Positions 14,775-50,905 of a stretch of 64,000 bases of DNA are shown piece by piece. Where the stretch lies: positions 434,001-498,000 of IMG/VR virus record IMGVR_UViG_3300050122_000263; one strand, written 5' to 3'. The notes under the pieces are model-generated. The model did not search any database. It saw only the letters and a program-made list of their open reading frames with translations, and was not told the DNA's origin. The translations under genes and the position numbers were made by a program. The stretch's first letter is position 1. The number at the start of each line of letters is the position of its first letter.

Positions 14775-17700
14775 TCAATAGAACACCTTGAAGGCCCTAA
14801 GTAACTTGAAGCTGCCATTACAACGCATTGGTTCTGGTGATCTAGGTGGTGACTCTTCGCGCAGATACGGCATCTGAATGCAGATGCAGTTGAAGCGTTC
14901 TCCAGCCACTTTATCGGCATCCATAATCCAATCTGCCTCATCTAAGAAGATACCATAGGAAAGGAAGGCGGAGAATTGAACCTGTACCCACCGACGCTGT
15001 AGCGTTTCTCGATAGCGAAGCATATATTTGTCGTAGACTCTACGACGTTCGATTTCGATTTTCTCTAGTTCGTATTCATACTCCTCTTGTGTCATCGAGT
15101 TATTTGCTCTGTTAATTTTGATCAGCTCATTCCAATCTCGGGTCTTGACGCCGGCGCGGAAAGTAGCAGCTTCAAAGACTCTGCCTCCAGTCATAAGCAA
15201 CTCATTAAGTTGAATCCACTCCTCTTGATTATCCGTATTAAACAGGGGAAGCTCGGCAACCTGCTCCTCCGACAAAGGTACAGGTTGATGTAGATCTAAG
15301 GGGATGTCAACGAATCCCTCATCATAACCGATTAATTCTATCAGACCTGTGATCCTGATAGGGATCTCACGGATACCCAAGCGAGATTGTGGCAGATTAG
15401 GGATGCGGGTTAAATCTGGCTCGATTGTTTGATGAGCACTATCCTGTCTCACAATCACATGAGGGAAGTCCCGCCCCACTGTATCGTGATCGCCATAAGT
15501 TGTAGCTTGAATTTGAGCCAGGAGGTGTGGGTTTGCCATCTGACCAACTCCCATGATAAGCTCTGGGCCATTGCCTCGATAGTTGGTCCATGATGTTTCT
15601 TTGATATAGTCGCGAGCATCGGCATCTGGCTGCTCAAACCTGATAGCAGGCTCAGTTGGCAGAGCCGTGGGTATCAGTAACTGTCGAGCAGATATTTGCC
15701 GTGCGGTGGGTCTAACCTTCCAGCCATAATGCAGCTCTGGTAGCAGCTCGATCTGACAGTCTCGCAGCAAGAGACGACGTCCCTCTTTGGCGCGATACAT
15801 GGGATCATCTTCACCTAGATTGGCCCCAATAACTGGCTGTATTTGGATACCTGTTTGCTCGATGTAATCATCAAAGCCATTGCGAAAACGGCCGTCTAAT
15901 TTGAGTTGGTCTAGATCGAGCTCCTCTGTTCTGGGTGCCCCTCTGGGATGGAAGGCTTCCTTATCAGCTGCTCTAACACGGAGTGTGTCATATCTCTGAT
16001 CATTAAAGACGACATGGTAGTTGCCCTCATCACCCGGTAGACTCCAATACTGCTCCTGAGGAGCACGCCGTGTAGGTCGTTCTAGAGGACGTGGACGATC
16101 TGCTACTCTCACGCCAGCTGCTTCTAGCGTCTTGGAGATGAGAACAGGCTTACCTTTGGTTAACTCAAACTGCTCAAAAGATCCTCTATTACTTGTGATG
16201 AAGGAATAAGGCATAATCAGCTTAACAGAGAAGCCCCGATATAAAGCCTTAACCAGGCGGACAGCACGGATATTGTAGCGGATCAGGACAGCCTCTCTTT
16301 TACGGTAATACAGGGAAAAGAGAGGAGCACAACAGAGCCCATGATGGATATCATAGCCAACCTGAATGTTGGAGGTGTCAAAGTTCATCAGCACTTCTAA
16401 CGGAGTCTGGCAATCTGTGGCAATGATCTGTAGAACAAAGACCTGGTTGGGGCTAAGACGTCGAGTTAGGGTCAAAACCGACTTTCTAATGGCATAGTAG
16501 TATTCATCGGTTGGCATATATTGCTGCAGCCACTCCAGTAGCAGCTCATACATGACACTTCGGGCGTCGTGAGTTTTCCCATAGATGAAGAGATCAACAT
16601 CCGTCTTGTCAACAAAACGCTCATACAACCAGTCATCCATGACAATGGAGAAAAGGCCGCCACCCAATACATAACCAAGGGGTGGATGCTCTTCACCGGG
16701 TGCTGGTAGATGAAAGCCTTCACGAGCATGTGCTTCTTGACGCTCTAATAGCATTTCTTGTATGCGCCTTGTTAACCAGTCATTCATCTGCAGTAGTTGG
16801 GGGAAGACTTGAAGCAGCCGATCCGTAACTCGCTCTTTACTAGCGAGCGTCACAGTGGCGGGTGGTGGAACTCTAAATGAGCCAGCCGGAATGGCAGCAC
16901 AGGGCTCAGCGTCCATGTAATCTGGCAGAAGGGGTCTGCTGTCTCGTAATGGGTCTAATAAGAAGAGGTGCCTGTTGAAGCGGTTGATCCGCTCTGGCTT
17001 AGTGTAAGGGTAGGCATGGGGCATGAGAGCGTAGGCAAACTGTTCATTGACAGCAATCAACCGTTGATAGTAGTTGATAATCTCCTGTGTGAACGAGTCG
17101 CTAGCATACAGTGCGTCAGATAAGCGTCGTAGATATTGGGCTGTGGCTGCGGGTGCTTGCTGGAAAAGCTCAACCACTGTGTCAAAGGGTAGCAGGGTGC
17201 CTTCTGGCACTTGGTCGAGATATCGCCAGATAAGTGGCAGGAAGCGCGAACAAATATTCTCTGGCCGCAGTTGTGCTACCACAGCCTCTGGGAGTGTTCC
17301 TGAAGTTGTCGGAGCTCCTGGAGTTATGAAGCGCTGTCTGAAGGGTCCGAGGGCCCTGGGAGCTGTTTGTGCAAAAATTGCTAAACCCTCCAGAGGCTCT
17401 GTAACCGCTTCTTCTTTGCCTTTGCCTCCATCTGCAGCTTTGACTTCTGGCTGAACAGCTTGTGCCTGACACTTCAGCACTCTTACGGCGGCTAACAGGG
17501 CAAAGAAAACAGTTTCACTCACATTTTCATCAAGATACCCTCTACCAAAGAGCGCATATAGATTTCGGATAAAAGAGTCAAGATCACTAAGATGCCTAAA
17601 AACATCGGGACCGATTTCTTGCTCAGACAGGATGAAGCGGTAACGATCTGGATCTGTGATATTCTGCCTCTCGTTGAACAAGAACAGCGTTTCCAGCGCT

Positions 17701-17837
17701 TCACTATTAGCTATAGCTAAATCACGGGGCAGCAGGAAACTATTGGCGTCATTAGCTCCTATCTGCAGAGTCACATATTGAGGCGCTTGCATCGGTCTCC
17801 CTTTTGTTCTGAGCAAAACAATACCAATGTTAAGCAT
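14775..17837 (-). CDS. Large Pol-beta-superfamily nucleotidyltransferase-like protein, family member A, with possible BTB-like N-terminus
   Basis: YVLGGGLFSI...KTDVDLFIYG (GG + DxD), LQII, NFDTSNIQVGYD and KALYRGF; homologous to 22477 and 55212. Confidence 0.75.
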   Translation of the reverse strand: MLNIGIVLLRTKGRPMQAPQYVTLQIGANDANSFLLPRDLAIANSEALETLFLFNERQNITDPDRYRFILSEQEIGPDVFRHLSDLDSFIRNLYALFGRGYLDENVSETVFFALLAAVRVLKCQAQAVQPEVKAADGGKGKEEAVTEPLEGLAIFAQTAPRALGPFRQRFITPGAPTTSGTLPEAVVAQLRPENICSRFLPLIWRYLDQVPEGTLLPFDTVVELFQQAPAATAQYLRRLSDALYASDSFTQEIINYYQRLIAVNEQFAYALMPHAYPYTKPERINRFNRHLFLLDPLRDSRPLLPDYMDAEPCAAIPAGSFRVPPPATVTLASKERVTDRLLQVFPQLLQMNDWLTRRIQEMLLERQEAHAREGFHLPAPGEEHPPLGYVLGGGLFSIVMDDWLYERFVDKTDVDLFIYGKTHDARSVMYELLLEWLQQYMPTDEYYYAIRKSVLTLTRRLSPNQVFVLQIIATDCQTPLEVLMNFDTSNIQVGYDIHHGLCCAPLFSLYYRKREAVLIRYNIRAVRLVKALYRGFSVKLIMPYSFITSNRGSFEQFELTKGKPVLISKTLEAAGVRVADRPRPLERPTRRAPQEQYWSLPGDEGNYHVVFNDQRYDTLRVRAADKEAFHPRGAPRTEELDLDQLKLDGRFRNGFDDYIEQTGIQIQPVIGANLGEDDPMYRAKEGRRLLLRDCQIELLPELHYGWKVRPTARQISARQLLIPTALPTEPAIRFEQPDADARDYIKETSWTNYRGNGPELIMGVGQMANPHLLAQIQATTYGDHDTVGRDFPHVIVRQDSAHQTIEPDLTRIPNLPQSRLGIREIPIRITGLIELIGYDEGFVDIPLDLHQPVPLSEEQVAELPLFNTDNQEEWIQLNELLMTGGRVFEAATFRAGVKTRDWNELIKINRANNSMTQEEYEYELEKIEIERRRVYDKYMLRYRETLQRRWVQVQFSAFLSYGIFLDEADWIMDADKVAGERFNCICIQMPYLREESPPRSPEPMRCNGSFKLLRAFKVFY

Positions 17838-20322: not shown

Positions 20323-20479
20323 CGAAGCGATGTGTTAAAATCAATGTTACCAAGAAACAGTTTTCAGCTTTAACAAGCACTTTTTATATTTGGTTATAGT
20401 TATGGCAGATCACTTCAACTCTCTACTAAGTGGCTGAGCTCTGAAAATCTTTTTCTCGTTTCTTGGCTGGCTGGCAAAG

Positions 20480-22024
20480 ATGGAGTTTCAGATGCAGGAG
20501 CCTAGCTCAAAACGAGCGATTGAACCTGAGAAGGAGTGCCAGATAGATGTCCTATTAAATGAGTATAAGTCTGATGTAACTTGTTCCACCCTTCGCTGGC
20601 TCAAGGAACACGGCATTACTCAGAAGCAAGTGAAGGATTGGTTAGAAGAGAGACGTCTCGTATTTCCATGGAGCACTCGGTACGATTCTGTACGACTCTA
20701 CTACAACCGTCTGATCCAGTACTTTCCCCTTATGCTAGTCAGAGTCAGGAAGCAGAGTGATATTCAATGGGCTCTGCGCTTCTGTCATCATTATAAGGCC
20801 CCGTTTGCTATCCGCAGTGGAGCTCACAGTACAGCCGGCTTCTCCGCTTCCACAGGCGTTATCATTGATTTGATGAAGTATGATAGGGTGAAGATCCTAT
20901 CTCATGAGAAGGGGCTAGTCAGAGTGGCTGCTGGAGCTCGAATTGGTGAAGTGGCTAAGATACTGGCTCAATCTGGGTTAGCTCTGGTGGCCGGTACATG
21001 TCAAAACACAGGTGTGGGTGGCCTGACTTTGGGCGGAGGTCTTGGCTTCTTAACTCGCAAATATGGGCTAACCATTGACAGTGTGGTAGAGCTCAATATT
21101 ATCCTGGCTAATGGTAGGCGCGTGACAGCCAACAAAGAGAGTCATCCTCAGCTGTTCTGGGCTTGTTGTGGGGCAGGCAACGGCAACTTCGGTGTTGTCA
21201 CTAGCTTTGTCTTCCAGACTTATCGAATCAAGGAAGTTGTTTTGTTCCAACTTTGGTTTGAGAAGAAGTACTTGAAGCCTGTATTTGAGTTTTGGCAGGG
21301 CTGGTGCTCCACAACAGATCCGAGTTTGACCACCGAACTCAAGATACGCAATGATGCTAGTAAACCTGGTCACATCTTGATTGAGGGGCAAGGCGATCCC
21401 TCCCCTTGTCGTAGGAAAGAATGTCCCAGCCCTTGCGACCCAACCAAGCATGTGGAGCATCTCATCACTCCTTTCTTCCAATGGGCGCCTAAGGTCAAGA
21501 TCTGGCTGACCAGTTTTGCTGATGCTGTTCGTCACTTCTCAACTCCGATTCCAGATATGTTCTTCAAGTATAACACGTCATTCGTTTACCGTCCTCTTCC
21601 GCGGAAGGCCATTAATATTATCGACAAGGCCTTCTCAGAAACGCCACCACAAATCTACATCTCATTCCACTCATTTGGAGGGCGTGTAGCTGAGATTGGT
21701 GAGTCAGAGACCGCTTTCCGTTGGCGCAAGTCGCTGTATTGGTTGTACATCCGCTCTTCTTGGAAAGATCCCCAGTTACAGGAGCAGCTACAAGCGGTTA
21801 ATGAGCGCATCTATCTACAACTCTGGCCCTTCCTAACTTCGGAGTTCAAAGTGCCTCGACTGTATGCGAACTTTAACGCCTTTAATGTTGGGCCTAAATA
21901 TGGGGAGGCTTATTGGGGTAAGAATTATAAAGCTCTACGCGTGATCAAGGCCTGCTATGATCCGGACAATTTCTTCACTTCGCCCCAACCGATCCAGCCT
22001 GCTAAGGTGATTACTGTGGAGTAA
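20480..22024 (+). CDS. FAD-linked oxidase, berberine-bridge-enzyme/AA7-like (FAD_binding_4 + BBE domain)
   Basis: AIRSGAHS, GTCQNTGVGGLTLGGGLG, GAGNGNFGVVTSF, YANF and YWGKNYKALRVIKACYDPDNFF. Confidence 0.92.
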   Translation: MEFQMQEPSSKRAIEPEKECQIDVLLNEYKSDVTCSTLRWLKEHGITQKQVKDWLEERRLVFPWSTRYDSVRLYYNRLIQYFPLMLVRVRKQSDIQWALRFCHHYKAPFAIRSGAHSTAGFSASTGVIIDLMKYDRVKILSHEKGLVRVAAGARIGEVAKILAQSGLALVAGTCQNTGVGGLTLGGGLGFLTRKYGLTIDSVVELNIILANGRRVTANKESHPQLFWACCGAGNGNFGVVTSFVFQTYRIKEVVLFQLWFEKKYLKPVFEFWQGWCSTTDPSLTTELKIRNDASKPGHILIEGQGDPSPCRRKECPSPCDPTKHVEHLITPFFQWAPKVKIWLTSFADAVRHFSTPIPDMFFKYNTSFVYRPLPRKAINIIDKAFSETPPQIYISFHSFGGRVAEIGESETAFRWRKSLYWLYIRSSWKDPQLQEQLQAVNERIYLQLWPFLTSEFKVPRLYANFNAFNVGPKYGEAYWGKNYKALRVIKACYDPDNFFTSPQPIQPAKVITVE

Positions 22025-22037
22025 ATGTGGAGTAACC

Positions 22038-22059
22038 ATCATATCTAGCTAGATATGAT
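22038..22059. terminator. Perfect 22-bp palindrome; first copy of a 19-bp direct repeat
   Basis: atcatatctagctagatatgat. Confidence 0.75.
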
Positions 22060-22081
22060 TACCATCATAAGAATCGAGCAT

Positions 22082-22414
22082 TTAAGCAATCATACAGGAA
22101 TGGTCTTTTATATCAACCCCGGCTAACCAACCTCCCATTGTTGATGGAGAAAATTGAATAGATCTTCTCTCATTATATATCAGTATATAAGATCCTCTCC
22201 AATTAGAAAATCTATTACTAGATGCCGCCTGGTCAGAGCCGTTAGGACATATAATTTGTCCATAGTGTTGTAATTTAGTTTGTAGATTACAGAGAGCCTC
22301 TTCTGGGGTAGCACCCCAGCTCTGTTGATAATTGAAGCTAGGCAGCTCAGGACCATGGGAATATAATGCCATTTCTATGTTATTTATTTCACGGGCCTCT
22401 ATGCTTTGGCACAT
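22082..22414 (-). CDS. Small AT-rich hypothetical protein with a HicB-like GxTxEEAxxN motif
   Basis: 110 aa; SWGATPEEALCNLQ; about 39% GC by hand count of 300 nt vs about 50% in the neighbouring oxidase. Confidence 0.5.
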   Translation of the reverse strand: MCQSIEAREINNIEMALYSHGPELPSFNYQQSWGATPEEALCNLQTKLQHYGQIICPNGSDQAASSNRFSNWRGSYILIYNERRSIQFSPSTMGGWLAGVDIKDHSCMIA

Positions 22415-22436
22415 GATTAATTCCGGCTAAACCGTT

Positions 22437-22455
22437 ATATCTAGCTAGATATGAT
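22437..22455. repeat. Second copy of the 19-bp palindromic direct repeat
   Basis: atatctagctagatatgat, identical to 22041-22059. Confidence 0.85.
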
Positions 22456-22476
22456 CATTGAAATCTTATCTATTTA

Positions 22477-25083
22477 TTGGAAATCGCTATGGAACCACCA
22501 CCGATCCGCCTAGTGCTACCGAGCTTTGTGCTGATCATTCCTGCAGACAAAGCCAATCGCTCTAGGGTGCTACGTGGAGTATATGCTTTCAATCAAGAAC
22601 TCAGGAGAGAAGGGGATATCTACCAGCAGTTCACTGTACCGTTAGATGAGTTACCTGAATCTGTGCTTACCAGTGTTGAGCAGCAACAAGCGTTAACCAG
22701 CTATGTGGGGTATCTCTTCGATCTAGCTCCTTTACCAGAGCAACATAATACTACAGCGCTACTTGCAGCCTTATCCGTAGGACGTCTGCTGGAGTGCCAA
22801 GAACTTATGTGTCAAAGGTTGAGTGAGATAGCTCGACTCTACTTCGGCCGTGCTGGCTTCGATCAATTGCCTGATGCGGAATTTATGATCTGGCTTTTTG
22901 GCCTCGCTCCACAGCAGGCAGCCACGTATCTGAAACAGTTCTCCAACCATATCTACGAACAGGATAGTTTTAACCGAGAGATTCTGTTGTATTGGCAAAC
23001 GTTGATCCAGGCTAACGAGCAATATGCTTACGCGTTGCAACCACACGGCTACCCATTTACTCGCAGAGAGCGGATTGATCGTCTAGCACCTAGTCTTTTT
23101 CTGTTGGATCCCTTACGCAACTCTCCACAGGTAGAGGACTATATGGGGGCTGATGTGGTGGCATTTATCGAACCAGATGCTTACAAGAATGCTCCGCCTC
23201 CTGTTGAGTTAGTTACAAAAGAATTAGTTGTTGAGCGTATCAGTCAAACCTTCCCGCTTATTATCCGACTCAATGAGAGATTAAGGGATATTGTCGTTCA
23301 GCGCTTCCCAGCTCTTGATGCTGGCTTTATCTTCGGGGGAGAGTTGTTCACAATTTTGCTTGATAAGTGGCTTTTCACCTATTTCAATGATAAACCAACC
23401 ATCACATTGAGTATATATGGACCAACTCAAGCTGTTAGAGCCCAAATTTCGGAACTGTTATTTGACGAGCTATCGGCCACATGGGAGGTCAACAAATTGC
23501 ATCAAGGTCGCCTGACAGCTATAATGTTCAATGGACACCACTATATTGTTACGTTACTCAATGATGATCGAGCTCACACTCCTCTAGAAGCCCTAATGGA
23601 TATGCCCCTCTCTAGCACACAAGTTGGTTACGACGTGCATAGAGGTTTGGTCTGCTCAGCCGCATTCTCTTTGTATTATCGAAAGCGTCAGGATGTTATT
23701 CTGAGTTACGGCGTCCCAGAACGCAGTGCAATCAAAACTCTGTATCGCGGCTTCTCCCTGCGTGTGATCGCTCCCTATGCTTACGTACTAGTGCAGGTTT
23801 CGCGATACAAGAGGAGACTGGAAGCATACATTCAAGAAACTCCTTTAATGCGTATCTCCAATGTTACCCTCATCAAAGGGCAACCGCTCTTGTTGATTGC
23901 TGATCCTCAAGCACCTCGTCTAGGGCGGGCTGACGAACCAAATGCCGTTGATCCACGCGCATTTACACATGCTGATCGTGCTATAGAGGCAAAACTACTG
24001 GGACAATGGGGACAGTATTATTTCCTGCCTTATAAACAGGGCGGTAATATCAGCATAGAATTTAACGGCGCCATGTCAGTTGCTGACATAAAACAGATCG
24101 CTTTACAAGCTGCCCTAGATAGAGGGGATTACGAGCTCGGATCAAATATCGTAATTGGCTCCAACGTCTTTCAGACAACACCTCTGATTAAGGTTTTTTG
24201 GGGTTACAGACATCTCTTCGGAATACGCGCCGCCGACCTCACGAGGGAACATATTATTCCCTCGTTTTTCATGACAGGGGCTCAGCTCAAACTCTTCGTC
24301 AGAAACTGTCGTATAAGCCAGGCAGATCAATACAATTTTGCCTGGCAGCACAATAGTCCCAATACGCTGATCCGGAAAGCGACGAGAGTTTTTGTCGAAC
24401 GTGATCCACGACAGGTGGAGAATGGGCCGCCACCTGTGCCTGCCATGCCAGCAGCACCCGAACTTAAACCGTTTAGACAGCGTAAACTAGTTGCCGTACA
24501 AACACAAGAGAATCCTGGGCCTCTCGATCATCCAGAGATGTTACGTATGGAGCGCTACGAATATCCAGTCCGGTTGACAGGCATCATTCAGCTAACTGGA
24601 GATCCCACTGCGCCTGAGGATCTACATGAACCACTGATGCTGACTGCAGAGGAAGAAAGAAATATGATAACTCTTGATCTTACTCAGCCTCTGCAGATGC
24701 GACAGGTGGAAGACTACTTCTTTCTGTCTAATACAGAGTATGTTAGACAGATGCTTGCGTACCGGGCAATGTTCGATGAAATCAGAGAACTCAGTAATGA
24801 TGCGTTTAGAATGAATCAAGAAGATGTTATTCGACGAGGAGATGCTCTGGACTTTACGGAGCAGATCCGGGGTATGCAAGCTGGTCTGCCTCGCTACATC
24901 CGCATTATATTTGATGTCCACATCGCACAATGGATGTTCTTGGATGAAGCCCATTGGTTGATGAGCTTCCAAGATATGTTAGCCTCCCAGTTGAACTGTG
25001 TTTTGTTTCGTCGATTCCAGCGCCGGAAAGGAGTTGATATGGTTCATTATTTCATCACACAGGGCTTCAAGCAGCTACCTTAA
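22477..25083 (+). CDS. Nucleotidyltransferase-like family member B, catalytically degenerate
   Basis: Homologous to 14775 and 55212 (YPFTRRERIDRLAPSLFLLDPL, QVGYD, LYRGF, FLDEAHW), but DVD is replaced by TIT and NFD by DMP. Confidence 0.75.
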   Translation: MEIAMEPPPIRLVLPSFVLIIPADKANRSRVLRGVYAFNQELRREGDIYQQFTVPLDELPESVLTSVEQQQALTSYVGYLFDLAPLPEQHNTTALLAALSVGRLLECQELMCQRLSEIARLYFGRAGFDQLPDAEFMIWLFGLAPQQAATYLKQFSNHIYEQDSFNREILLYWQTLIQANEQYAYALQPHGYPFTRRERIDRLAPSLFLLDPLRNSPQVEDYMGADVVAFIEPDAYKNAPPPVELVTKELVVERISQTFPLIIRLNERLRDIVVQRFPALDAGFIFGGELFTILLDKWLFTYFNDKPTITLSIYGPTQAVRAQISELLFDELSATWEVNKLHQGRLTAIMFNGHHYIVTLLNDDRAHTPLEALMDMPLSSTQVGYDVHRGLVCSAAFSLYYRKRQDVILSYGVPERSAIKTLYRGFSLRVIAPYAYVLVQVSRYKRRLEAYIQETPLMRISNVTLIKGQPLLLIADPQAPRLGRADEPNAVDPRAFTHADRAIEAKLLGQWGQYYFLPYKQGGNISIEFNGAMSVADIKQIALQAALDRGDYELGSNIVIGSNVFQTTPLIKVFWGYRHLFGIRAADLTREHIIPSFFMTGAQLKLFVRNCRISQADQYNFAWQHNSPNTLIRKATRVFVERDPRQVENGPPPVPAMPAAPELKPFRQRKLVAVQTQENPGPLDHPEMLRMERYEYPVRLTGIIQLTGDPTAPEDLHEPLMLTAEEERNMITLDLTQPLQMRQVEDYFFLSNTEYVRQMLAYRAMFDEIRELSNDAFRMNQEDVIRRGDALDFTEQIRGMQAGLPRYIRIIFDVHIAQWMFLDEAHWLMSFQDMLASQLNCVLFRRFQRRKGVDMVHYFITQGFKQLP

Positions 25084-25153
25084 CAGTCTGTATCAAATCT
25101 ACTTATTATTCACAATACAATCAGTGTAATACTCAAGACCCATAGTTAAAATA

Positions 25154-33361: not shown

Positions 33362-34153
33362 CTATGGATTCTGTTGAACTGGATCCCGTGCACCAAGCTG
33401 CAGGCCCATTCCCACTGCGATGGCTTGTTCAGCAGCAGTAAGAGGTAGTTCAATTCCTGCCTCCTCACGAGCAAATACATAAATAGCTCCGTTCTCCTGA
33501 TAGATGAGAAAATTGCGTTGAATCTCTCTATAAACCGGGTTGCCACGTACCTCTGGATGTTGAGTCGACCTGACATGTAGGCGAACAGCACCATTGTCTG
33601 CGGGTGCGTGTGCTACAGCTTCAGCGGTGCGAATATCGACATCGGCTTGGGCGATCACGGCTGCAGCTTGATTATCTTCATCTGCCTCAGCCTCGGCCAT
33701 AGCGTCCTGATCCACAGTGGTATTGATTAAGATCTCTCTCACCTGTTGAAAGTAGCGCTGCCAATCTATCTCAGCCTCGTCGATGAAGGGTTGGCGTTGT
33801 TCCTGCGTCATCTGGCCCCATTCCTCTCCTATCGTGAGCAGTTCCTCCACTGGATCATATGGAGGTTCTTCAGCCATAAATTGAGCTATACGGCCTTTAG
33901 CGTAGTAGGAGACAGCCGGCTTGGGCTTAGGAAGATCAAAGGCGTGGATATCTTCGATCGTTCCTCTCACCATTTCAGCTTGATCCTTGGCATCAAGCTC
34001 AAAGACCATGCGAGCTCCAACTAAGTTCCTATGGGCATAGCAGAAGAACCGAATATTAGGCGCCTCATTGTGAGTCACGCAGAATAAGGCAGTGACATGA
34101 CATCCCTCAGCTTGGCAGATGATTTCTCCACTTGGTGTGATTGTTTGCTCCAT
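33362..34153 (-). CDS. Zn-finger + HMG-box-like protein with C-terminal shared module; tandem paralog of 34412
   Basis: CQAEGCHVTALFCVTH...CYAH; KPKPAVSYYAK...ELLTIGEEWGQMTQEQRQPFIDEAEIDWQRY fits the HMG-box helix pattern. Confidence 0.7.
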   Translation of the reverse strand: MEQTITPSGEIICQAEGCHVTALFCVTHNEAPNIRFFCYAHRNLVGARMVFELDAKDQAEMVRGTIEDIHAFDLPKPKPAVSYYAKGRIAQFMAEEPPYDPVEELLTIGEEWGQMTQEQRQPFIDEAEIDWQRYFQQVREILINTTVDQDAMAEAEADEDNQAAAVIAQADVDIRTAEAVAHAPADNGAVRLHVRSTQHPEVRGNPVYREIQRNFLIYQENGAIYVFAREEAGIELPLTAAEQAIAVGMGLQLGARDPVQQNP

Positions 34154-34257
34154 ACTCTAGTGTTGGCCTTGTTTAGGCTTAAACATTATGAATGTGATGG
34201 AGTTCAATCTCACTCTACTTGTTAAATTTCGCCCTCTCAGAGTGGGGCTACAAGCAG

Positions 34258-34282
34258 AAAATCTCTTATGGTAAGAGATTTT
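34258..34282. terminator. Intergenic hairpin
   Basis: aaaatctctta-tgg-taagagatttt. Confidence 0.6.
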
Positions 34283-34332
34283 CATTAATCTGCCTTCTTA
34301 ATGCTCAATCAAGAGCAGATGGCTACTCCTAC

Positions 34333-34356
34333 AAAAATCTCTAACTAGGGATTTTT
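34333..34356. terminator. Hairpin downstream of 34412..34972
   Basis: aaaaatctcta-ac-tagggattttt. Confidence 0.65.
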
Positions 34357-34411
34357 TACTACAATGCTACTGAGTTGGATCTAACACATCCTTAATTGCT
34401 CGGTGTCAACC

Positions 34412-34972
34412 TCAGTAGTCAGCATCGACTTGATGCTGGGCTTTCTCAGCTCCTGCTTCCTCAAGTAACTGCGCGTCTATTTCTTCACGTATCGCCTTAA
34501 ATAGCTTCTCTTCCACTTCCTTATCCACCTTAACTAAGGGATGAACCAAAACATCCTTTACCTGGTGAACGTAATGGTGGTACTCTACTCCATCTTCATA
34601 AAAGAAAGGTTGACGTTGATGCTCATTCATTTGAGCCCATTCCTTCCCTATCTCAAGAAAATCTCGTGAAAAATTATACACAATATCCCTAGGATGCTTA
34701 TCCCTAAGCTGAGTCATACGGAACTTGGCATAACAAACGATAGATGGATTGCGCGTTCCAAGAAGATATAAGTTCCTGAGCTCTCCTCTTGCCATTTCAA
34801 CAAATGTGATCTCAAACCGAGCGTCCATGTTGCTAAAAAACGCACCCAAATGAGATTGGCAATAGAAACGAATATTGGGTGCATCATTGTGAGTCACACA
34901 GAAGAGGGAGGAAGTGCTACATCCTTCAATTTGACAGGTAATCTCTTCACCTAATGCTAAAGTCTGGTCCAT
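34412..34972 (-). CDS. Zn-finger + HMG-box-like protein; tandem paralog of 33362
   Basis: CQIEGCSTSSLFCVTHNDAPNIRFYCQSH; FLEIGKEWAQMNEHQRQPF. Confidence 0.7.
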   Translation of the reverse strand: MDQTLALGEEITCQIEGCSTSSLFCVTHNDAPNIRFYCQSHLGAFFSNMDARFEITFVEMARGELRNLYLLGTRNPSIVCYAKFRMTQLRDKHPRDIVYNFSRDFLEIGKEWAQMNEHQRQPFFYEDGVEYHHYVHQVKDVLVHPLVKVDKEVEEKLFKAIREEIDAQLLEEAGAEKAQHQVDADY

Positions 34973-35141
34973 GCTCTGGTGTTGGCCTTGTTTAGACCTG
35001 TATTATAACAGAAGGTGAAAATTCAATCTCTGGTTCTTGCTGATAGAACACTCAGACAAATCAAGCAGATTTAAGTCACAAGATTCAAGACCGATCTGCC
35101 ATCTTTTATCAATGTGATTGCAATAAAGCGGGCTAAATAGA

Positions 35142-36284
35142 ATGTGGCAAGCTGTTCAAACTCCAACTCGTGAAGGCCTGGCCGTAATGACCGTTGTACA
35201 GATTAAGGAGATTGCTAAGCAGTACCAAATACAAGCCCCAAGTAAGCTGAAGAAAGCGGAGCTCATTCAATATATCTTGGGTAAGCTGCAGGAGCGAAAC
35301 ACAGGCACAGTTCGGGGTGAGAACCTCCCTGTGCGCTATGACGAGCTTGTGCCAGTTTACATGGATTTGTCAGAGTATCAGAAATACGCCTCAGAAGAAC
35401 AACCGGCATGGCTCATCCATCTACATCTCCATGGTTACGCAACCGTACCAATAGCTGGTCTAGATGTGGCCTGGGCTCAGAGCAAGTTCTTTGACTTCCT
35501 AGAGTTGTGTTCTGCCAACTTCAAACGCCAGGATCCAACTACCTGGACCAGACATAATCTGCCACCCTTGTTACATGGCATCTTGAAGCATTATTGTGGT
35601 CACACAGAATTACAATGGGTGGTGAGGGAGTTATGTACCCCCATCTTCGCCAAAATCTGGAAGGTGGCGGAGCGTGATCTTCTCAGCTCCTTCGATGGTA
35701 TCAGCTTCCGTCCCCCTGATCTTAAACAAGCTGTTTGGAAGTCATGGCTACATAATGATCAGCATCGCAATGAGCACGGTTTCTGTTGTGTGCAAGGAGT
35801 AGCCACCCTCATGGAATGCGGCGCGCAGGATGGTGGTTTGGTTGTGTTAGAGGGGTCCCATCACGTGTTTGAAGAATATATGGCCAGACACCCTTGCGAC
35901 AACCTCAACTTTACCAAGGCGGATCTCAATGATCCAGCCCTACAAGGCCGTAGACGCTTGAAGATCTGTGCTCCAGCTGGCAGCATTCTACTCTGGAGAT
36001 CAGACATGATGCATGAGTCTAGCTGTCCTCAAGGCCAAATACCCAGGATGGGCCTCTATATGTGCCAACAACCAAGGCGAGGAGCAGACCAAATCACGCT
36101 CAATAAGAGGATAGAAGCTTATCAGAAAGGCAGAGTCAGCTCTCATTCCTGTTATGGGCCTTGGTTCAGCATCAATCCTGAGCATCCTCGCACATGGGGC
36201 TCGGAGGTGAACACTCCCACAGTCATTGAGATTGCAATGGTGCAACCTGGCTCACTGAGAGCTCGCCTGATCGGCTATGATTAA
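35142..36284 (+). CDS. Fe(II)/2-oxoglutarate dioxygenase (PhyH-like) with N-terminal Rho-N/SAP-like helical domain
   Basis: WLHNDQ (HxD), CVQG, GGLVVLEGSH, AGSILLWRSDMMHES and R in PRMGLY; N-terminal MTVVQIKEIAKQYQI...KLKKAELIQYI. Confidence 0.82.
   Translation: MWQAVQTPTREGLAVMTVVQIKEIAKQYQIQAPSKLKKAELIQYILGKLQERNTGTVRGENLPVRYDELVPVYMDLSEYQKYASEEQPAWLIHLHLHGYATVPIAGLDVAWAQSKFFDFLELCSANFKRQDPTTWTRHNLPPLLHGILKHYCGHTELQWVVRELCTPIFAKIWKVAERDLLSSFDGISFRPPDLKQAVWKSWLHNDQHRNEHGFCCVQGVATLMECGAQDGGLVVLEGSHHVFEEYMARHPCDNLNFTKADLNDPALQGRRRLKICAPAGSILLWRSDMMHESSCPQGQIPRMGLYMCQQPRRGADQITLNKRIEAYQKGRVSSHSCYGPWFSINPEHPRTWGSEVNTPTVIEIAMVQPGSLRARLIGYD
36225..36284 (+). repeat. 60-bp direct repeat, copy 1 (3' end of the dioxygenase)
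   Basis: 52/60 identical to 37132-37191. Confidence 0.9.
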
Positions 36285-36288
36285 AAAA

Positions 36289-36312
36289 TTGTAGATATTT
36301 AAATATCTACAA
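36289..36312. terminator. Perfect 24-bp palindrome after the dioxygenase stop
   Basis: ttgtagatatttaaatatctacaa. Confidence 0.75.
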
Positions 36313-36327
36313 CTTCAGAAATCGCAA

Positions 36328-37047
36328 ATGGAAGGAAGCCGTCATCGTCACGGTAAACATCGCAAGCGTCACGGAAAGACTATTAAGGCTCGCAAGGTTG
36401 TATGTGACAAGTTGATTGTTGATGAGCTCTGGATTGATGGTGAGGCTATGGATATCAGAGAATTAAGAGAGAAACTGTTATTCCGTCATATTCGCTTGTT
36501 GCCCGGACTGAACCACGTTAGACAAATATCTAATTTCCTACCAGTCATCCCGGCAGGTACTAGTGCCCAAGGGGGAGGTGGATTGTCTTTTCCGGTTGCG
36601 ATGATCAACTCAAGTGGAACCCGCGTTCCATTACGGGAGGCGAAGGCAACTTTCAATTATTCAGCACCAGGAAATAAGCAATACTATGCAGTACTGGTCA
36701 TCCCAACCAGTTCCAGCTATCCCGACGGAGCGTTCATCGATCTAACCAACAAATCTGTTACTTCTGCTGATCAAGTGACACAGGCTGATGTATCGAAGTT
36801 TTATCTGTATGATAGTGGAGTGACACAATCTACAAGTCAACCTATTGATGTGACCCTGTCCGCAGATGAGGGACAATATCTACTGGATCTCTCCGATGTG
36901 ACCCCACCTCCAGGAGTTATTATTGCTTCTGGATCGATTCAACCTACCTCTGGCGGCGTCTACCTTGTATTCGTAGCTGCTAGTACTGGCACTGATCCTA
37001 TCTCTGGTAACTTTAGTGCTAGTAATGTGAATTATACATATCAGTAA
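36328..37047 (+). CDS. Hypothetical protein with His/Arg/Lys-rich leader and beta-rich C-terminal domain
   Basis: 239 aa; MEGSRHRHGKHRKRHGK leader. Confidence 0.75.
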   Translation: MEGSRHRHGKHRKRHGKTIKARKVVCDKLIVDELWIDGEAMDIRELREKLLFRHIRLLPGLNHVRQISNFLPVIPAGTSAQGGGGLSFPVAMINSSGTRVPLREAKATFNYSAPGNKQYYAVLVIPTSSSYPDGAFIDLTNKSVTSADQVTQADVSKFYLYDSGVTQSTSQPIDVTLSADEGQYLLDLSDVTPPPGVIIASGSIQPTSGGVYLVFVAASTGTDPISGNFSASNVNYTYQ

Positions 37048-37086
37048 ACTTAACAGAAAAGCGATAGTAGTATTGAGAATATAAAG

Positions 37087-37113
37087 GATCATCTCATAAC
37101 CGATGAGATGATC
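37087..37113. terminator. Hairpin downstream of 36328..37047
   Basis: gatcatctcat-aaccg-atgagatgatc. Confidence 0.7.
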
Positions 37114-37131
37114 TAAAATATGCCGCTCATG

Positions 37132-37191
37132 ATTGAGCTTGCATAGGTATAAGCTGGCTCGTTGAGAGCTCGCCTGATCGGCTATGATTAA
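37132..37191 (+). pseudogene. Decayed duplicate of the last 20 codons of the dioxygenase (direct repeat copy 2)
   Basis: Translates as IELA*V*AGSLRARLIGYD* vs IEIAMVQPGSLRARLIGYD*. Confidence 0.85.
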
Positions 37192-37214
37192 AAACACCTC
37201 ATATGAGGTATTTT
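37191..37214. terminator. Hairpin sharing a 19-bp core with 40921-40948
   Basis: aaaacacctcatatgaggtatttt. Confidence 0.7.
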
Positions 37215-40920: not shown

Positions 40921-40948
40921 AAAAAATACCTCATATGAGGTATTTTTT
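40921..40948. terminator. Perfect 28-bp palindrome between convergent genes
   Basis: aaaaaatacctcatatgaggtatttttt. Confidence 0.8.
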
Positions 40949-49573: not shown

Positions 49574-50905
49574 TTATTTCTTGTAGAAGTACTTGCCATA
49601 CAACTTTAAGTTCTGGCCATGAGTGTTCTGTGTGTCACCGGTGATTATCTCGAAGGGTTTGCAGCGCCAACGTGGTAGTGACTGAGTTGGGCTGACTTGC
49701 TTAAGTGTCAACTGCGTGTAGTTGTCCATATTCTGACCCCTGATTGCACAATTACGGCAGACAACTTCCTCATTTTGACTCCAATAAGCCTTGTTAGGGG
49801 TGAACATCTGACCATGCACGGTACAGCCAACGCCGCAGCTGTGGCAGTAGATGACCAGCTGCCCTTCACATATGTCGTAGTAGATTGTGCTACCCGAGTG
49901 AGTTGTTCCTGGTTGGTAGTTAAGACGTTGTATCCTCTCAAAGCGCCCCTGAATATAACGCATGTACAGGAGTAGGCGTTTGAACTTATGTTCAGGACTC
50001 TCCGTGCTGGCTATGAGGGGATGAGGAGGTGCTCCAGTTAAAGGAGTTTGCTTCATCTCCCCAACTTCAGCCATAATATGTGGGAAGCGACTCTGTAGAG
50101 GTGAGATAGCCCTCAACAGTTGACTCATCCTCTTCCGCAGGGAGTGCGATGAATCCCAACCTATAGCTTCACAGATAGACTCGACTTCGCCTAAGAAGAT
50201 CGGGAGAGCGTCGCCCAACTCTGCTGGGCATAGCCCCTGCAAACCCCTCAGGGGTTTGCTTAGTGCGTCAAGTGGTGAAAGTAGTTGTGACGCCTGGTTA
50301 TCTCGCTTTAATGAGAGGTCTAGGCTTGTTAGATATCGGTGTTGTTTCCACTCTGGGTAGCCCTGGGCTTGTGCAAGCTTATCTATGAATGATGGATTAG
50401 CTGTTATGAGTGGAGAGGCATCAATAGTTCTGGTTTGTGGCGGAGATTCCACTACTTCAATTAAAACCTCGTTGAGATCAGGACTGGGCGAGTCAAACCG
50501 TATATTAGTGTTATTATCCACCAAGCAGCTAGGGCTGAGTGAGCGCTCTGAAACTTGCTCTAGAGCTTGAGAGGTTTGTTCTGGGGGCTGAGCTGAGATC
50601 TGCTCTGAAATCTGTTCAGGTGAATCAGAGCGCGTGAGTGATTCTCCACTGCTAGATCTATCAACTTCCGCCTTACTTAGGGCATCATACTGAGTCAGGA
50701 TGACTCTCACAGATCCTTTCCTGGCAGCAGTCTTAGTGACAGGTGTCTTAGTATTTCCTTCTGATCTTGTCCTGCGCTGAACCTCTATCCATTTTCCCTT
50801 AGGGCTGTTGCGTCTCATTTTCCAACTGTTGTTCCTACTAGCCTTTGTGCTGCTTTGATGTTGTTTAACGACAGTGGGGTGAATCAATCCCACCACTCTA
50901 CTCAC
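49574..50905 (-). CDS. Hypothetical protein with disordered basic/Ser-rich N-terminus and C-terminal Zn ribbon
   Basis: YCHSC...VCRNC; start uncertain (GTG; MRRNSP is an alternative). Confidence 0.65.
   Translation of the reverse strand: MSRVVGLIHPTVVKQHQSSTKASRNNSWKMRRNSPKGKWIEVQRRTRSEGNTKTPVTKTAARKGSVRVILTQYDALSKAEVDRSSSGESLTRSDSPEQISEQISAQPPEQTSQALEQVSERSLSPSCLVDNNTNIRFDSPSPDLNEVLIEVVESPPQTRTIDASPLITANPSFIDKLAQAQGYPEWKQHRYLTSLDLSLKRDNQASQLLSPLDALSKPLRGLQGLCPAELGDALPIFLGEVESICEAIGWDSSHSLRKRMSQLLRAISPLQSRFPHIMAEVGEMKQTPLTGAPPHPLIASTESPEHKFKRLLLYMRYIQGRFERIQRLNYQPGTTHSGSTIYYDICEGQLVIYCHSCGVGCTVHGQMFTPNKAYWSQNEEVVCRNCAIRGQNMDNYTQLTLKQVSPTQSLPRWRCKPFEIITGDTQNTHGQNLKLYGKYFYKK

What the first reader, a model, noticed from the sequence alone, without database searches (positions are those of the whole stretch)
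22038..22455. AT-rich ORFan flanked by identical 19-bp palindromic direct repeats
Seen: atatctagctagatatgat occurs at 22041-22059 and 22437-22455, bracketing only the 110-aa minus-strand ORF. That ORF is about 39% GC (hand count) against about 50% in its neighbours. The left copy is the hairpin ending the FAD-oxidase gene. The protein contains SWGATPEEALCNLQ, resembling the HicB/UPF0150 GxTxEEAxxN motif. Inferred: a foreign gene cassette inserted into a terminator hairpin with target duplication.
Basis: partly seen in the sequence, partly recalled or inferred. Interest (0 to 1): 0.68.

Follow-up and report, generated by a model that had tools for sequence, protein, structure and literature searches.

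The report
Orphan gene between duplicated terminator hairpins

Summary
The 19-mer stands at 22041-22059 and 22437-22455 and nowhere else in the 582-kb record. It brackets only the 110-aa minus-strand ORF, which is 39.3% GC against 48.3% and 46.9% in its neighbours.

The genome is a giant virus (NCLDV) from peat, not a bacterium. It holds about 300 hairpin palindromes concentrated just after stop codons, and it encodes an RNase III. This fits the known giant-virus 'hairpin rule' for mRNA 3' ends. The left palindrome is an ordinary member, placed to end both convergent genes.

The repeat is really about 41 nt: the FAD-oxidase stop codon, a spacer and the hairpin. The flank has decayed while the 19-mer is intact in both copies.

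The bracketed 355-nt segment is unique in the genome. Its codon usage looks like intergenic DNA, and its ORF has no relatives among 1.84 billion cluster representatives. HicB is not supported.

At least three or four other genes in this genome carry similar flank duplications, among them a low-GC HNH homing endonuclease. An insertion with target duplication is therefore the best reading (about 0.55).

No empty site could be found, because no close relative exists in the collections. No RNA data exist. Interest is modest.

The parts
20480..22024 (+). FAD-linked oxidase gene (514 aa; FAD_binding_4 and BBE domains). It is intact up to its C-terminal BBE domain.
22019..22059 (.). Left copy of the roughly 41-nt repeat unit: last codon and stop of the FAD oxidase (GAGTAA), a spacer and the hairpin.
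22038..22059 (.). Perfect 22-bp palindrome (11-nt arms). It lies 13 nt after the FAD-oxidase stop and 22 nt after the ORF110 stop. It is the candidate two-way mRNA 3'-end hairpin (RNA fold -8.8 kcal/mol on the + strand, -9.7 on the - strand).
22035..22069 (.). 9-bp exact direct repeat ACCATCATA (22035-22043 and 22061-22069) straddling the left palindrome. GTGGAGTAA also occurs twice, at 22016-22024 and 22027-35. These are small slippage-type duplications at the left junction.
   Evidence: (D5)
22060..22414 (.). Unique AT-rich segment between the repeat units. It has no similarity to any other part of the 582-kb record.
22082..22414 (-). ORF110, an orphan ORF of 110 aa with 39.3% GC. Its codon score is 0.042 (long genes 0.141 +/- 0.042). 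An ORF this long arises in 0.15% of shuffles of the gap.
22415..22455 (.). Right copy of the repeat unit. GATTAA, a relic of GAGTAA, abuts the ORF110 start codon. The unit lies in the 74-nt divergent gap before the 864-aa gene.
22437..22452 (.). Right palindrome, perfect over 16 bp. On + strand RNA it extends to 11 pairs through two G-U pairs (-6.5 kcal/mol). On the - strand the hairpin is not the best fold.
22489..25083 (+). 864-aa gene, one of at least 10 paralogues in this virus with no relatives outside it. Its N-terminus is intact.

Best explanation
The window comes from an uncultured giant virus (Nucleocytoviricota) from peat. In this genome, hairpin-forming palindromes placed a few to some tens of nucleotides after stop codons mark the 3' ends of genes. 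In mimiviruses and marseilleviruses such hairpins in the RNA are recognised and cut by a viral RNase III and then polyadenylated.

The 22-bp palindrome at 22038-22059 is one of these signals. Being a perfect palindrome between two convergent genes, it most likely ends both the FAD-oxidase and the ORF110 transcripts.

The second copy belongs to a roughly 41-nt duplicate of 'FAD-oxidase stop codon + spacer + hairpin'. The ancestral layout was most likely FAD oxidase -> hairpin -> 864-aa gene, with a gap of about 69 nt. About 355-396 bp of AT-rich DNA carrying ORF110 then entered at the hairpin's edge, and the target was duplicated. A replicative template switch or illegitimate recombination at the hairpin is the likeliest route, not a transposase. 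As a result the resident gene and the newcomer share one hairpin copy at their 3' ends, and the other copy stays upstream of the 864-aa gene.

ORF110 is an orphan of unknown function and is not HicB.

Shown: the repeats, the genome-wide hairpin pattern, the composition, the lack of relatives, and analogous scars elsewhere in the genome. Inferred: the insertion event and its mechanism, 3'-end processing at the hairpin, and expression of ORF110.
For: Giant virus: a major capsid protein and a family-B DNA polymerase are present.

Hairpin rule:
- There are 299 hairpins with stems of at least 10 bp, against 18 in a block-shuffled genome.
- They occur in 87/118 convergent, 106/223 tandem and only 22/118 divergent gaps.
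- 280/460 genes have one in their 3' gap, at a median of 18 nt after the stop.
- 47 perfect palindromes have arms of at least 11 nt, against 0.14 expected.
- The record encodes an RNase III.
- The mechanism is described in PMC4402537 and PMC5413956.

Duplication:
- The 19-mer is exact twice and absent elsewhere.
- The unit extends to 41 nt, and the extension has chance P=0.002.
- There are 0/19 differences in the 19-mer against 9/22 in the rest (Fisher P=0.0017).
- The rightward flanks are unrelated (6/22).
- The segment between has no similarity anywhere in the genome, which excludes a simple tandem duplication.
- Both neighbouring genes are intact.

Same kind of scar elsewhere in the genome:
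- 16 of 458 genes have flanking-gap similarity above the control 99th percentile.
- A 239-aa gene in the window (36328-37047) lies between 63-nt copies of the upstream gene's 3' end.
- A 106-aa gene is bracketed in the same way.
- An HNH homing endonuclease gene of 39.5% GC lies between 43-nt copies of the downstream gene's 5' end.
- In 3 of the 5 scars I picked out and measured by hand, a repeat boundary lies within 4 nt of a hairpin edge; this gives P about 0.02.

Composition: all HNH_3 genes are among the 15 lowest-GC genes, and so is ORF110.

ORF110: an ORF this long is unlikely by chance (P=0.0015).
Against: - No empty site or orthologous locus was found. Every other contig holding the locus is 99.9-100% identical, and no read or contig skips the segment.
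- No RNA run holds the locus, so neither 3'-end formation at the hairpin nor expression of ORF110 is shown.
- The 22-nt extension of the repeat rests on 13/22 matches.
- If the flank decay is real, the event is old. It is then unclear why ORF110 still has intergenic-like codon usage.
- Hairpins do occur in 19% of divergent gaps, so a hairpin at the right-hand position is not in itself abnormal.
- Identical hairpins also recur at distant loci, so some copying or convergence of hairpins happens without an insertion.
- The segment brings no visible promoter of its own.
Confidence: 0.55

Rival explanations
1. There is no gene. The 355-nt segment is non-coding filler or the decayed remnant of a mobile element such as a homing endonuclease gene, and the 110-codon frame is fortuitous. 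The duplication is still an insertion scar, but nothing is expressed as protein.
For: - The codon score of 0.042 lies within the range of stop-free triplets drawn from intergenic DNA (0.023 +/- 0.041). It is in the bottom 6.7% of small called genes.
- GC is 39.3% against 37.3% for intergenic DNA.
- There is no homologue of any kind.
- The AlphaFold single-sequence model has pLDDT 36.
- 21 other gaps of at least 450 bp exist in the genome.
Against: - An ORF of at least 110 aa appears in only 0.15% of shuffles of the 464-bp gap.
- The ORF fills 110 of the 114 open codons.
- Its frame scores best of the six.
- Its stop lies 22 nt from the hairpin, like real genes.
- The ESM Atlas model is moderately confident (pLDDT 0.62).
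- If the flank decay of the repeat is real, an unselected frame should have acquired stops.
Confidence: 0.2
2. De novo gene birth in place. The terminator unit was duplicated locally by slippage, the spacer between the copies grew from the virus's own non-coding DNA, and an ORF arose in it. This is what was proposed for strain-specific ORFans of pandoraviruses.
For: - Codon usage and GC are intergenic-like, and there is no homologue.
- Small slippage duplications occur at the left junction: ACCATCATA twice and GTGGAGTAA twice.
Against: - No source for 355 nt of spacer is visible in the genome.
- A 110-codon ORF in 39% GC DNA is improbable (P=0.0015).
- Other bracketed genes in this genome are clearly imported or moved genes: an HNH endonuclease, and a 239-aa gene with a distant paralogue.
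Confidence: 0.12
3. ORF110 is an old resident gene, and the two palindromes are independent hairpins made alike by gene conversion or shared sequence constraints. There was no insertion.
For: - Identical or near-identical hairpins recur at distant loci: 27 nt at G000 309163/474922, 24 nt at 220321/556591 and 20 nt at 297936/430191.
- Hairpins occur in 22/118 divergent gaps.
- The 19-mer is conserved far better than its flank.
Against: - Similarity continues for 22 nt beyond the palindrome into the FAD-oxidase stop codon (P=0.002). Constraint on a hairpin does not explain this.
- ORF110 has the third-lowest GC of 460 genes and a poor codon score.
- I estimate about 0.03 adjacent hairpin pairs identical by chance, taking about 5 identical pairs among about 45,000 pairs (own arithmetic).
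Confidence: 0.1
4. This is a site-specific gene cassette. A small circle carrying ORF110 and one palindromic recombination site integrated at the matching hairpin, in the manner of an integron cassette or phage att site. The first reader's HicB-antitoxin cassette is a variant of this idea.
For: - A palindromic site flanks a single ORF on both sides.
- An arm-spacer-arm layout (8+6+8) is conceivable for a tyrosine recombinase site (own knowledge).
Against: - The site occurs only twice in 582 kb and in no other viral contig.
- There is no Phage_integrase match in the record.
- Repeat lengths at the other scars vary from 26 to 63 nt and consist of gene ends, not a common site.
- There is no HicB, HicA or any defence-family match.
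- The host is a virus of eukaryotes.
Confidence: 0.03

Closest known systems
Giant-virus 'hairpin rule' for mRNA 3'-end formation (Mimiviridae, Pithovirus, Marseilleviridae; PMC4402537, PMC5413956, Byrne et al. 2009 as cited there)
   Same: - Palindromes are strongly enriched between genes and tied to upstream stop codons, whatever the orientation of the next gene.
- A virus-encoded RNase III is present.
- The left palindrome sits at the usual distance from two stop codons.
   Different: - The virus has no close cultured relative: its capsid protein is at most 43% identical to anything held.
- Cleavage and polyadenylation at the hairpins are not shown here.
- The stems are short perfect palindromes, often of the form AAAAAC...GTTTTT.
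- The special point at this locus is that one hairpin has been duplicated on both sides of a gene.
Free-standing homing endonuclease gene insertions (as in T4-like phages, own knowledge; and the HNH gene of this same genome at G000 389178-390662)
   Same: - A low-GC gene (39.5% against 39.3%) lies between two intact resident genes.
- It is bracketed by an imperfect duplicate of a neighbour's end, with a hairpin at the repeat boundary.
   Different: ORF110 has no nuclease domain or any other recognisable domain. It is a quarter of the size, and nothing shows that it can move itself.
Strain-specific ORFans of pandoraviruses and the de novo gene creation proposal (PMC5995976)
   Same: An orphan with no extant homologue whose composition resembles intergenic DNA.
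   Different: - Here the orphan carries an insertion-type scar, which argues for arrival of the DNA rather than birth from resident spacer.
- This genome is 46.6% GC, so long random ORFs are rarer than in pandoraviruses.
HicB / UPF0150 antitoxins
   Same: Only a short G-x-T-x-EEA-like string at the start of a predicted helix.
   Different: - No profile match.
- No adjacent HicA candidate: the flanking genes are an FAD oxidase and an 864-aa protein with no Pfam match; the 58-aa ORF nested in ORF110 was not scanned.
- The predicted order of secondary structure (helix, helix, strands) does not fit, though the model has low confidence.
- The context is a giant virus of eukaryotes.
Transposon or MITE insertions with target-site duplication in giant viruses (Pandoravirus salinus MITEs, PMC4495683; pithovirus repeats, PMC10664404; both listed, not read)
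   Same: A direct repeat of the target flanks an inserted segment.
   Different: - Single copy, with no terminal inverted repeats beyond the palindrome itself and no transposase.
- The duplication is long (19-41 nt) and imperfect.
GNA-type (bulb-type, B-lectin) mannose-binding lectins
   Same: The five best PDB sequence matches all belong to this family. They are about 110 aa and collinear with the query over residues 31-93 (E=0.13-1.1).
   Different: - The scores are below significance.
- The Pfam B_lectin profile finds nothing.
- The QxDxNxVxY sugar-binding motifs are not kept (read from the alignment, own knowledge of the motif).

Membership tests
Giant-virus hairpin-rule 3'-end signal | Genome-wide excess of hairpin palindromes, concentrated after stop codons whatever the orientation of the next gene | tested here: met
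   There are 299 hairpins against 18 in the shuffled genome. They occur in 74% of convergent, 48% of tandem and 19% of divergent gaps. The median distance after the stop is 18 nt.
Giant-virus hairpin-rule 3'-end signal | This palindrome lies just downstream of a stop codon and folds as an RNA hairpin | tested here: met
   It lies 13 nt after the FAD-oxidase stop and 22 nt after the ORF110 stop. It folds at -8.8 and -9.7 kcal/mol, with z -3.1 and -2.1.
Giant-virus hairpin-rule 3'-end signal | The virus encodes the RNase III-type processing enzyme | tested here: met
   Ribonuclease_3 scores 53.5 bits and Ribonucleas_3_3 41 bits in a 437-aa frame at G000 313.2 kb. A poly(A) polymerase was not searched for.
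Giant-virus hairpin-rule 3'-end signal | Transcripts are cut and polyadenylated inside the hairpin | not testable with these tools
   No RNA run holds the locus.
HicB / UPF0150 antitoxin | Match to the family profiles | tested here: not met
   Pfam gives 0 families at E<=1. HicB_lk_antitox gives no match in the record at E<=10, while the control rings in 11 of 14 genomes. NCBIfam and PADLOC give nothing.
HicB / UPF0150 antitoxin | Adjacent HicA toxin gene in an operon | tested here: not met
   The neighbours are a 514-aa FAD oxidase and an 864-aa paralogue-family protein that matches no Pfam family. Between the repeat copies the only other ORF of 40 aa or more is a 58-aa one nested inside ORF110 in another frame; it was not scanned for HicA.
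HicB / UPF0150 antitoxin | The fold characteristic of the family (strands before the helix that carries the motif) | tested here: inconclusive
   The model has pLDDT 36 and gives helix, helix, then strands. The nearest structures to the ESM Atlas model are HATPase_c- or Cache-like at TM<0.5, and none is HicB-like.
Transposable element with target-site duplication | Transposase or terminal inverted repeats, and more than one copy | tested here: not met
   No domain was found. No inverted repeats exist beyond the palindrome. The segment is unique in the genome.
Site-specific cassette (integron- or att-like) | A recombinase in the genome and the same site at several cassette borders | tested here: not met
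   No Phage_integrase match was found. The site is present only twice. Serine recombinases were not searched for, and the record is 61% complete.
De novo (proto-)gene | No homologue anywhere; composition like non-coding DNA | tested here: met
   Searches are; the only hits are repeat proteins matched in 4-7 short stretches each, which I read as spurious (three of the five were inspected). The codon score of 0.042 compares with 0.023 +/- 0.041 for intergenic triplets.
De novo (proto-)gene | Homologous non-coding sequence at the same locus in a close relative | not testable with these tools
   No relative closer than 43% capsid identity is held.
B-lectin (GNA-type) | Match to the family profile and conserved sugar-binding motifs | tested here: not met
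   Only sub-threshold pairwise matches were found (E=0.13-1.1). The B_lectin profile finds nothing.

The most novel reading that the evidence does not exclude
In this giant virus, the 3'-end hairpins are preferred entry points for new DNA. Replication or recombination breaks at the palindromes let a foreign or new gene in and duplicate the hairpin or the adjoining gene end. The resident gene keeps its terminator and the newcomer receives one. This would be a cassette-like route of orphan-gene gain that needs no transposase, and it would leave datable scars.
Probability: 0.2. Interest if true: 0.6.

Novelty: new member of a known kind. Interest (0 to 1): 0.38.

Why it matters
Where the many orphan genes of giant viruses come from is an open question. 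The candidates are import, fast divergence and birth from non-coding DNA. An orphan that still carries a recognisable insertion scar gives a concrete case to test. So does a genome with several such scars whose breakpoints lie near terminator hairpins, one of them around a bona fide mobile gene.

If relatives of this virus are sequenced, the filled and empty sites would show directly how and when a gene was gained. The locus also adds an uncultured, deep-branching soil virus to the lineages that appear to use hairpins to end their messages.

By itself, and without an empty site or RNA data, it is a modest finding.

Tried and rejected
- **Empty site.** I searched the virus collection with both neighbouring proteins and the metagenome collection with the FAD oxidase. 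I also searched with the 19-mer and with the predicted empty-site junction. Only the same virus came back, and the metagenome hits were at most 26% identical over any substantial length (a 34-residue piece reached 59%).
- **Population variants.** Contigs of four peat runs laid on 20400-25100 (4,701 letters, within the operators' limit) showed no skipped form and no differences.
- **RNA evidence.** No RNA run holds the locus.
- **Relatives of ORF110.** The word search returned only ORF110 itself. The exhaustive HMMER search returned five weak hits, each matched in 4-7 short stretches; the three I inspected are tandem-repeat proteins, and I judge all five spurious. There is no paralogue in the genome.
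- **Structure.** The single-sequence AlphaFold model is too poor (pLDDT 36) for a fold search, so none was run. ESM Atlas neighbours are all below TM 0.5.
- **HicB.** Rejected.
- **B-lectin lead.** It came from PDB matches and is not confirmed by the profile.
- **Simple tandem duplication.** Rejected, because neither flank resembles the bracketed segment.
- **LINE-type retro-insertion** (known for poxvirus gene capture, own knowledge). Rejected, because there is no A or T run at either junction.
- **Known RNA genes.** None were found.
- **Promoter reading of the repeat's ATATGAT end.** AAATGAT is enriched in sense orientation 21-60 nt upstream of starts (18 sense against 3 antisense). The ATATGAT variant is not enriched, so I dropped this.
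- **Genetic code.** No alternative code was used.

Full report
**Observation**

ATATCTAGCTAGATATGAT is exact at 22041-22059 and 22437-22455. The 16-bp palindromic core occurs at these two places and nowhere else in the 582,007-bp record that holds the window. In the virus collection the 19-mer occurs only in another assembly of the same virus.

Between the copies lies the 110-aa minus-strand ORF 22082-22414, together with a 58-aa ORF nested inside it in another frame. Its GC is 39.3%, against 48.3% and 46.9% for its neighbours, and it ranks third lowest of 460 called genes. Contigs from several peat samples carry the same arrangement at 99.9-100% identity, and contigs of four further runs bridge both copies. 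It is therefore not an assembly artefact.

**What genome this is**

The record encodes an NCLDV major capsid protein and a family-B DNA polymerase. The runs that hold it are peat metagenomes. The capsid protein is at most 43% identical to anything in the protein collection. The 864-aa neighbour has at least 10 paralogues inside the genome and none outside. The window therefore belongs to an uncultured, isolated giant virus of eukaryotes, and bacterial terminator and toxin-antitoxin logic does not apply.

**The palindrome**

The genome has 47 perfect palindromes with arms of 11 nt or more, where 0.14 are expected. It has 299 hairpins with stems of at least 10 bp, against 18 in a block-shuffled genome. 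These hairpins lie in 74% of convergent gaps, 48% of tandem gaps and only 19% of divergent gaps. In total, 61% of genes have one in their 3' gap, at a median of 18 nt after the stop.

This is the 'hairpin rule' described for mimiviruses, Pithovirus and marseilleviruses. There a viral RNase III cuts the hairpin in the RNA and a viral polymerase adds the tail (PMC4402537, PMC5413956). The record encodes an RNase III.

The left palindrome (22038-22059) is perfect over 22 bp. It lies 13 nt after the FAD-oxidase stop and 22 nt after the ORF110 stop, and it folds well on both strands. It is an ordinary member of this class, placed to serve both convergent genes. Processing at it is inferred, because no RNA data exist.

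**The repeat is longer and older than a 19-bp target duplication**

In register, the similarity runs over 41 nt, 22019-22059 against 22415-22455, at 78% identity. The 22 positions left of the 19-mer match at 13/22 (chance P=0.002). The 22 positions to the right match at 6/22, which is chance level.

The unit begins at the last codon and stop of the FAD oxidase (GAGTAA). Its counterpart GATTAA abuts the ORF110 start codon. The 19-mer has no differences while the rest of the unit has 9/22 (Fisher P=0.0017). Either both hairpin copies are kept by selection or conversion, or the true duplication is 19-26 nt and the rest is chance.

On + strand RNA the right copy keeps 11 pairs through two G-U pairs. 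On the minus strand the hairpin is not the best fold. The left junction also carries small slippage-type repeats: ACCATCATA twice, 26 nt apart, and GTGGAGTAA twice.

**The bracketed segment**

The segment 22060-22436 has no similarity to anything else in the genome at DNA or translated level. Neither flank resembles it, so a simple tandem duplication is excluded.

ORF110 has no relatives. The word search returned only itself. The exhaustive HMMER search of 1.84 billion representatives returned five weak hits, each matched in 4-7 short stretches. The three I inspected are tandem-repeat proteins, and I take all five as spurious. Pfam, NCBIfam and PADLOC give nothing.

Its codon score is 0.042. 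That is far below long genes (0.141 +/- 0.042) and in the bottom 6.7% of small genes. It sits inside the range of stop-free triplets drawn from the virus's own intergenic DNA (0.023 +/- 0.041).

Against a chance frame: an ORF this long arises in 0.15% of shuffles of the gap. It fills 110 of 114 open codons. Its frame scores best of the six.

The HicB idea fails. There is no profile match even at E<=10 and no adjacent HicA candidate. The motif is a common helix N-cap (own knowledge).

A weak but consistent lead points to GNA-type lectins of the same length (E=0.13-1.1). The B_lectin profile does not confirm it. The AlphaFold model (pLDDT 36) is unusable.

**Other scars in the same genome**

I compared the gaps on either side of every gene. 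In 16 of 458 cases the two gaps are more alike than the control 99th percentile. Some of these are tandem paralogues. The others are single genes between imperfect direct repeats made of a neighbour's end:

- The 239-aa gene in the window (36328-37047) lies between 63-nt copies of the upstream gene's 3' end (36225-36287 and 37132-37194).
- A 106-aa gene lies at G000 292.8 kb.
- A 150-aa gene lies at 335.4 kb.
- A 494-aa HNH homing endonuclease gene of 39.5% GC lies between 43-nt copies of the downstream gene's first codons, which differ mostly at third positions.

All genes with HNH_3 domains are among the 15 lowest-GC genes, as is ORF110. I then measured five of these scars chosen by hand, including the finding's own locus. 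In three of the five a repeat boundary lies within 4 nt of a hairpin edge, which gives P about 0.02. This is a rough figure, because the alignment ends are fuzzy and the five cases were hand-picked.

**Interpretation**

The best reading is an insertion of about 355-396 bp at the edge of the FAD-oxidase hairpin, into an ancestral FAD oxidase -> hairpin -> 864-aa gene arrangement, with duplication of the target. Four features argue against a transposase or site-specific recombinase, and for template switching or illegitimate recombination at palindromes:

- the repeat lengths vary between loci;
- there are no terminal inverted repeats;
- there are no other copies;
- there is no tyrosine recombinase.

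This mechanism is inferred, not shown. I give the insertion reading about 0.55. Its rivals are:

- a non-coding or decayed remnant with a chance ORF (0.2);
- birth of the ORF in place from expanded spacer, as proposed for pandoravirus orphans (PMC5995976) (0.12);
- an old resident gene with hairpins made alike by conversion (0.1);
- a site-specific cassette (0.03).

**Limits**

No empty site could be found because no close relative exists in the collections. No RNA evidence exists. My gene calls are crude: longest ATG ORFs of at least 70 aa. No alternative genetic code was used.

**Verdict**

The palindrome belongs to a known kind of signal. The duplicated hairpin around an orphan gene is a plausible insertion scar of modest interest. 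Its value would rise sharply if relatives with the empty site are found.

Noticed in passing
window about 50190-50270 (core CATAGCCCC at 50229-50237, element in minus orientation), plus about 30 further copies across G000: A dispersed two-hairpin element of about 70 nt. Its consensus is GCTCCAAGC-[stem-loop 1]-CAGGGGCTATG-[stem-loop 2]-CGACGCTCC. The 9-nt core occurs 37 times where about 4 are expected. The stems differ between copies but stay complementary. Box-to-box spacings differ mostly in steps of 3 (52, 55, 58). About 30 of the 37 cores lie inside long called ORFs, mostly antisense to them. It has no Rfam match, and the ORF that holds the window copy has no Pfam match. It recalls the Rickettsia palindromic elements that insert in frame into genes (own knowledge). 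It may be the most unusual thing in this genome.
   Followed up: partly
window 36225-37214: A 239-aa gene (36328-37047) is bracketed by 63-nt imperfect copies of the 3' end, including the stop, of the upstream 380-aa PhyH-like gene. Each copy is followed directly by a different hairpin. The gene has a 27%-identical paralogue at G000 243.4 kb.
   Followed up: partly
L018:3098-4782 (G000 389098-390782): A 494-aa HNH homing endonuclease gene (three HNH_3 domains plus NUMOD4, 39.5% GC) lies between a helicase gene and an Exo_endo_phos gene. It is bracketed by 43-nt copies of the downstream gene's first 14 codons, which differ mostly at synonymous positions. A hairpin sits 2 nt from the repeat boundary.
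   Followed up: partly
whole record; in the window at 37196-37214 and 40922-40948: Identical hairpin palindromes recur at distant loci. AAAAATACCTCATATGAGGTATTTTT-type copies lie at G000 309163, 471196 and 474922. A 24-nt copy lies at 220321/556591 and a 20-nt copy at 297936/430191. Many hairpins begin right at the stop as TAAAAAC...GTTTTT.
   Followed up: partly
window 22489-25083, 14775-17837 and 55212-57905, plus seven or more loci elsewhere in G000: The 864-aa neighbour belongs to a family of at least 10 paralogues (27-34% identical; three lie in tandem at 568.9-577.1 kb). The family has no Pfam domain and no homologue outside this virus in the word search.
   Followed up: partly
G000-wide, upstream of about 18 genes: AAATGAT is enriched in sense orientation 21-60 nt upstream of start codons (18 sense against 3 antisense). 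It may be a promoter element for a subset of genes. No strong general promoter motif emerged.
   Followed up: partly
G000 500.4-505.7 kb (outside the window): An AT-rich island of 38-41% GC holds two small HNH_3 genes, several small ORFs, a 1-kb gap and a perfect 45-nt direct repeat 373 bp apart (503227/503600) with no gene between the copies.
   Followed up: no
window 34100-35030: The regions around the starts of two adjacent minus-strand genes (263 aa and 186 aa) are about 70% alike over 112 nt. They look like tandem paralogues.
   Followed up: no
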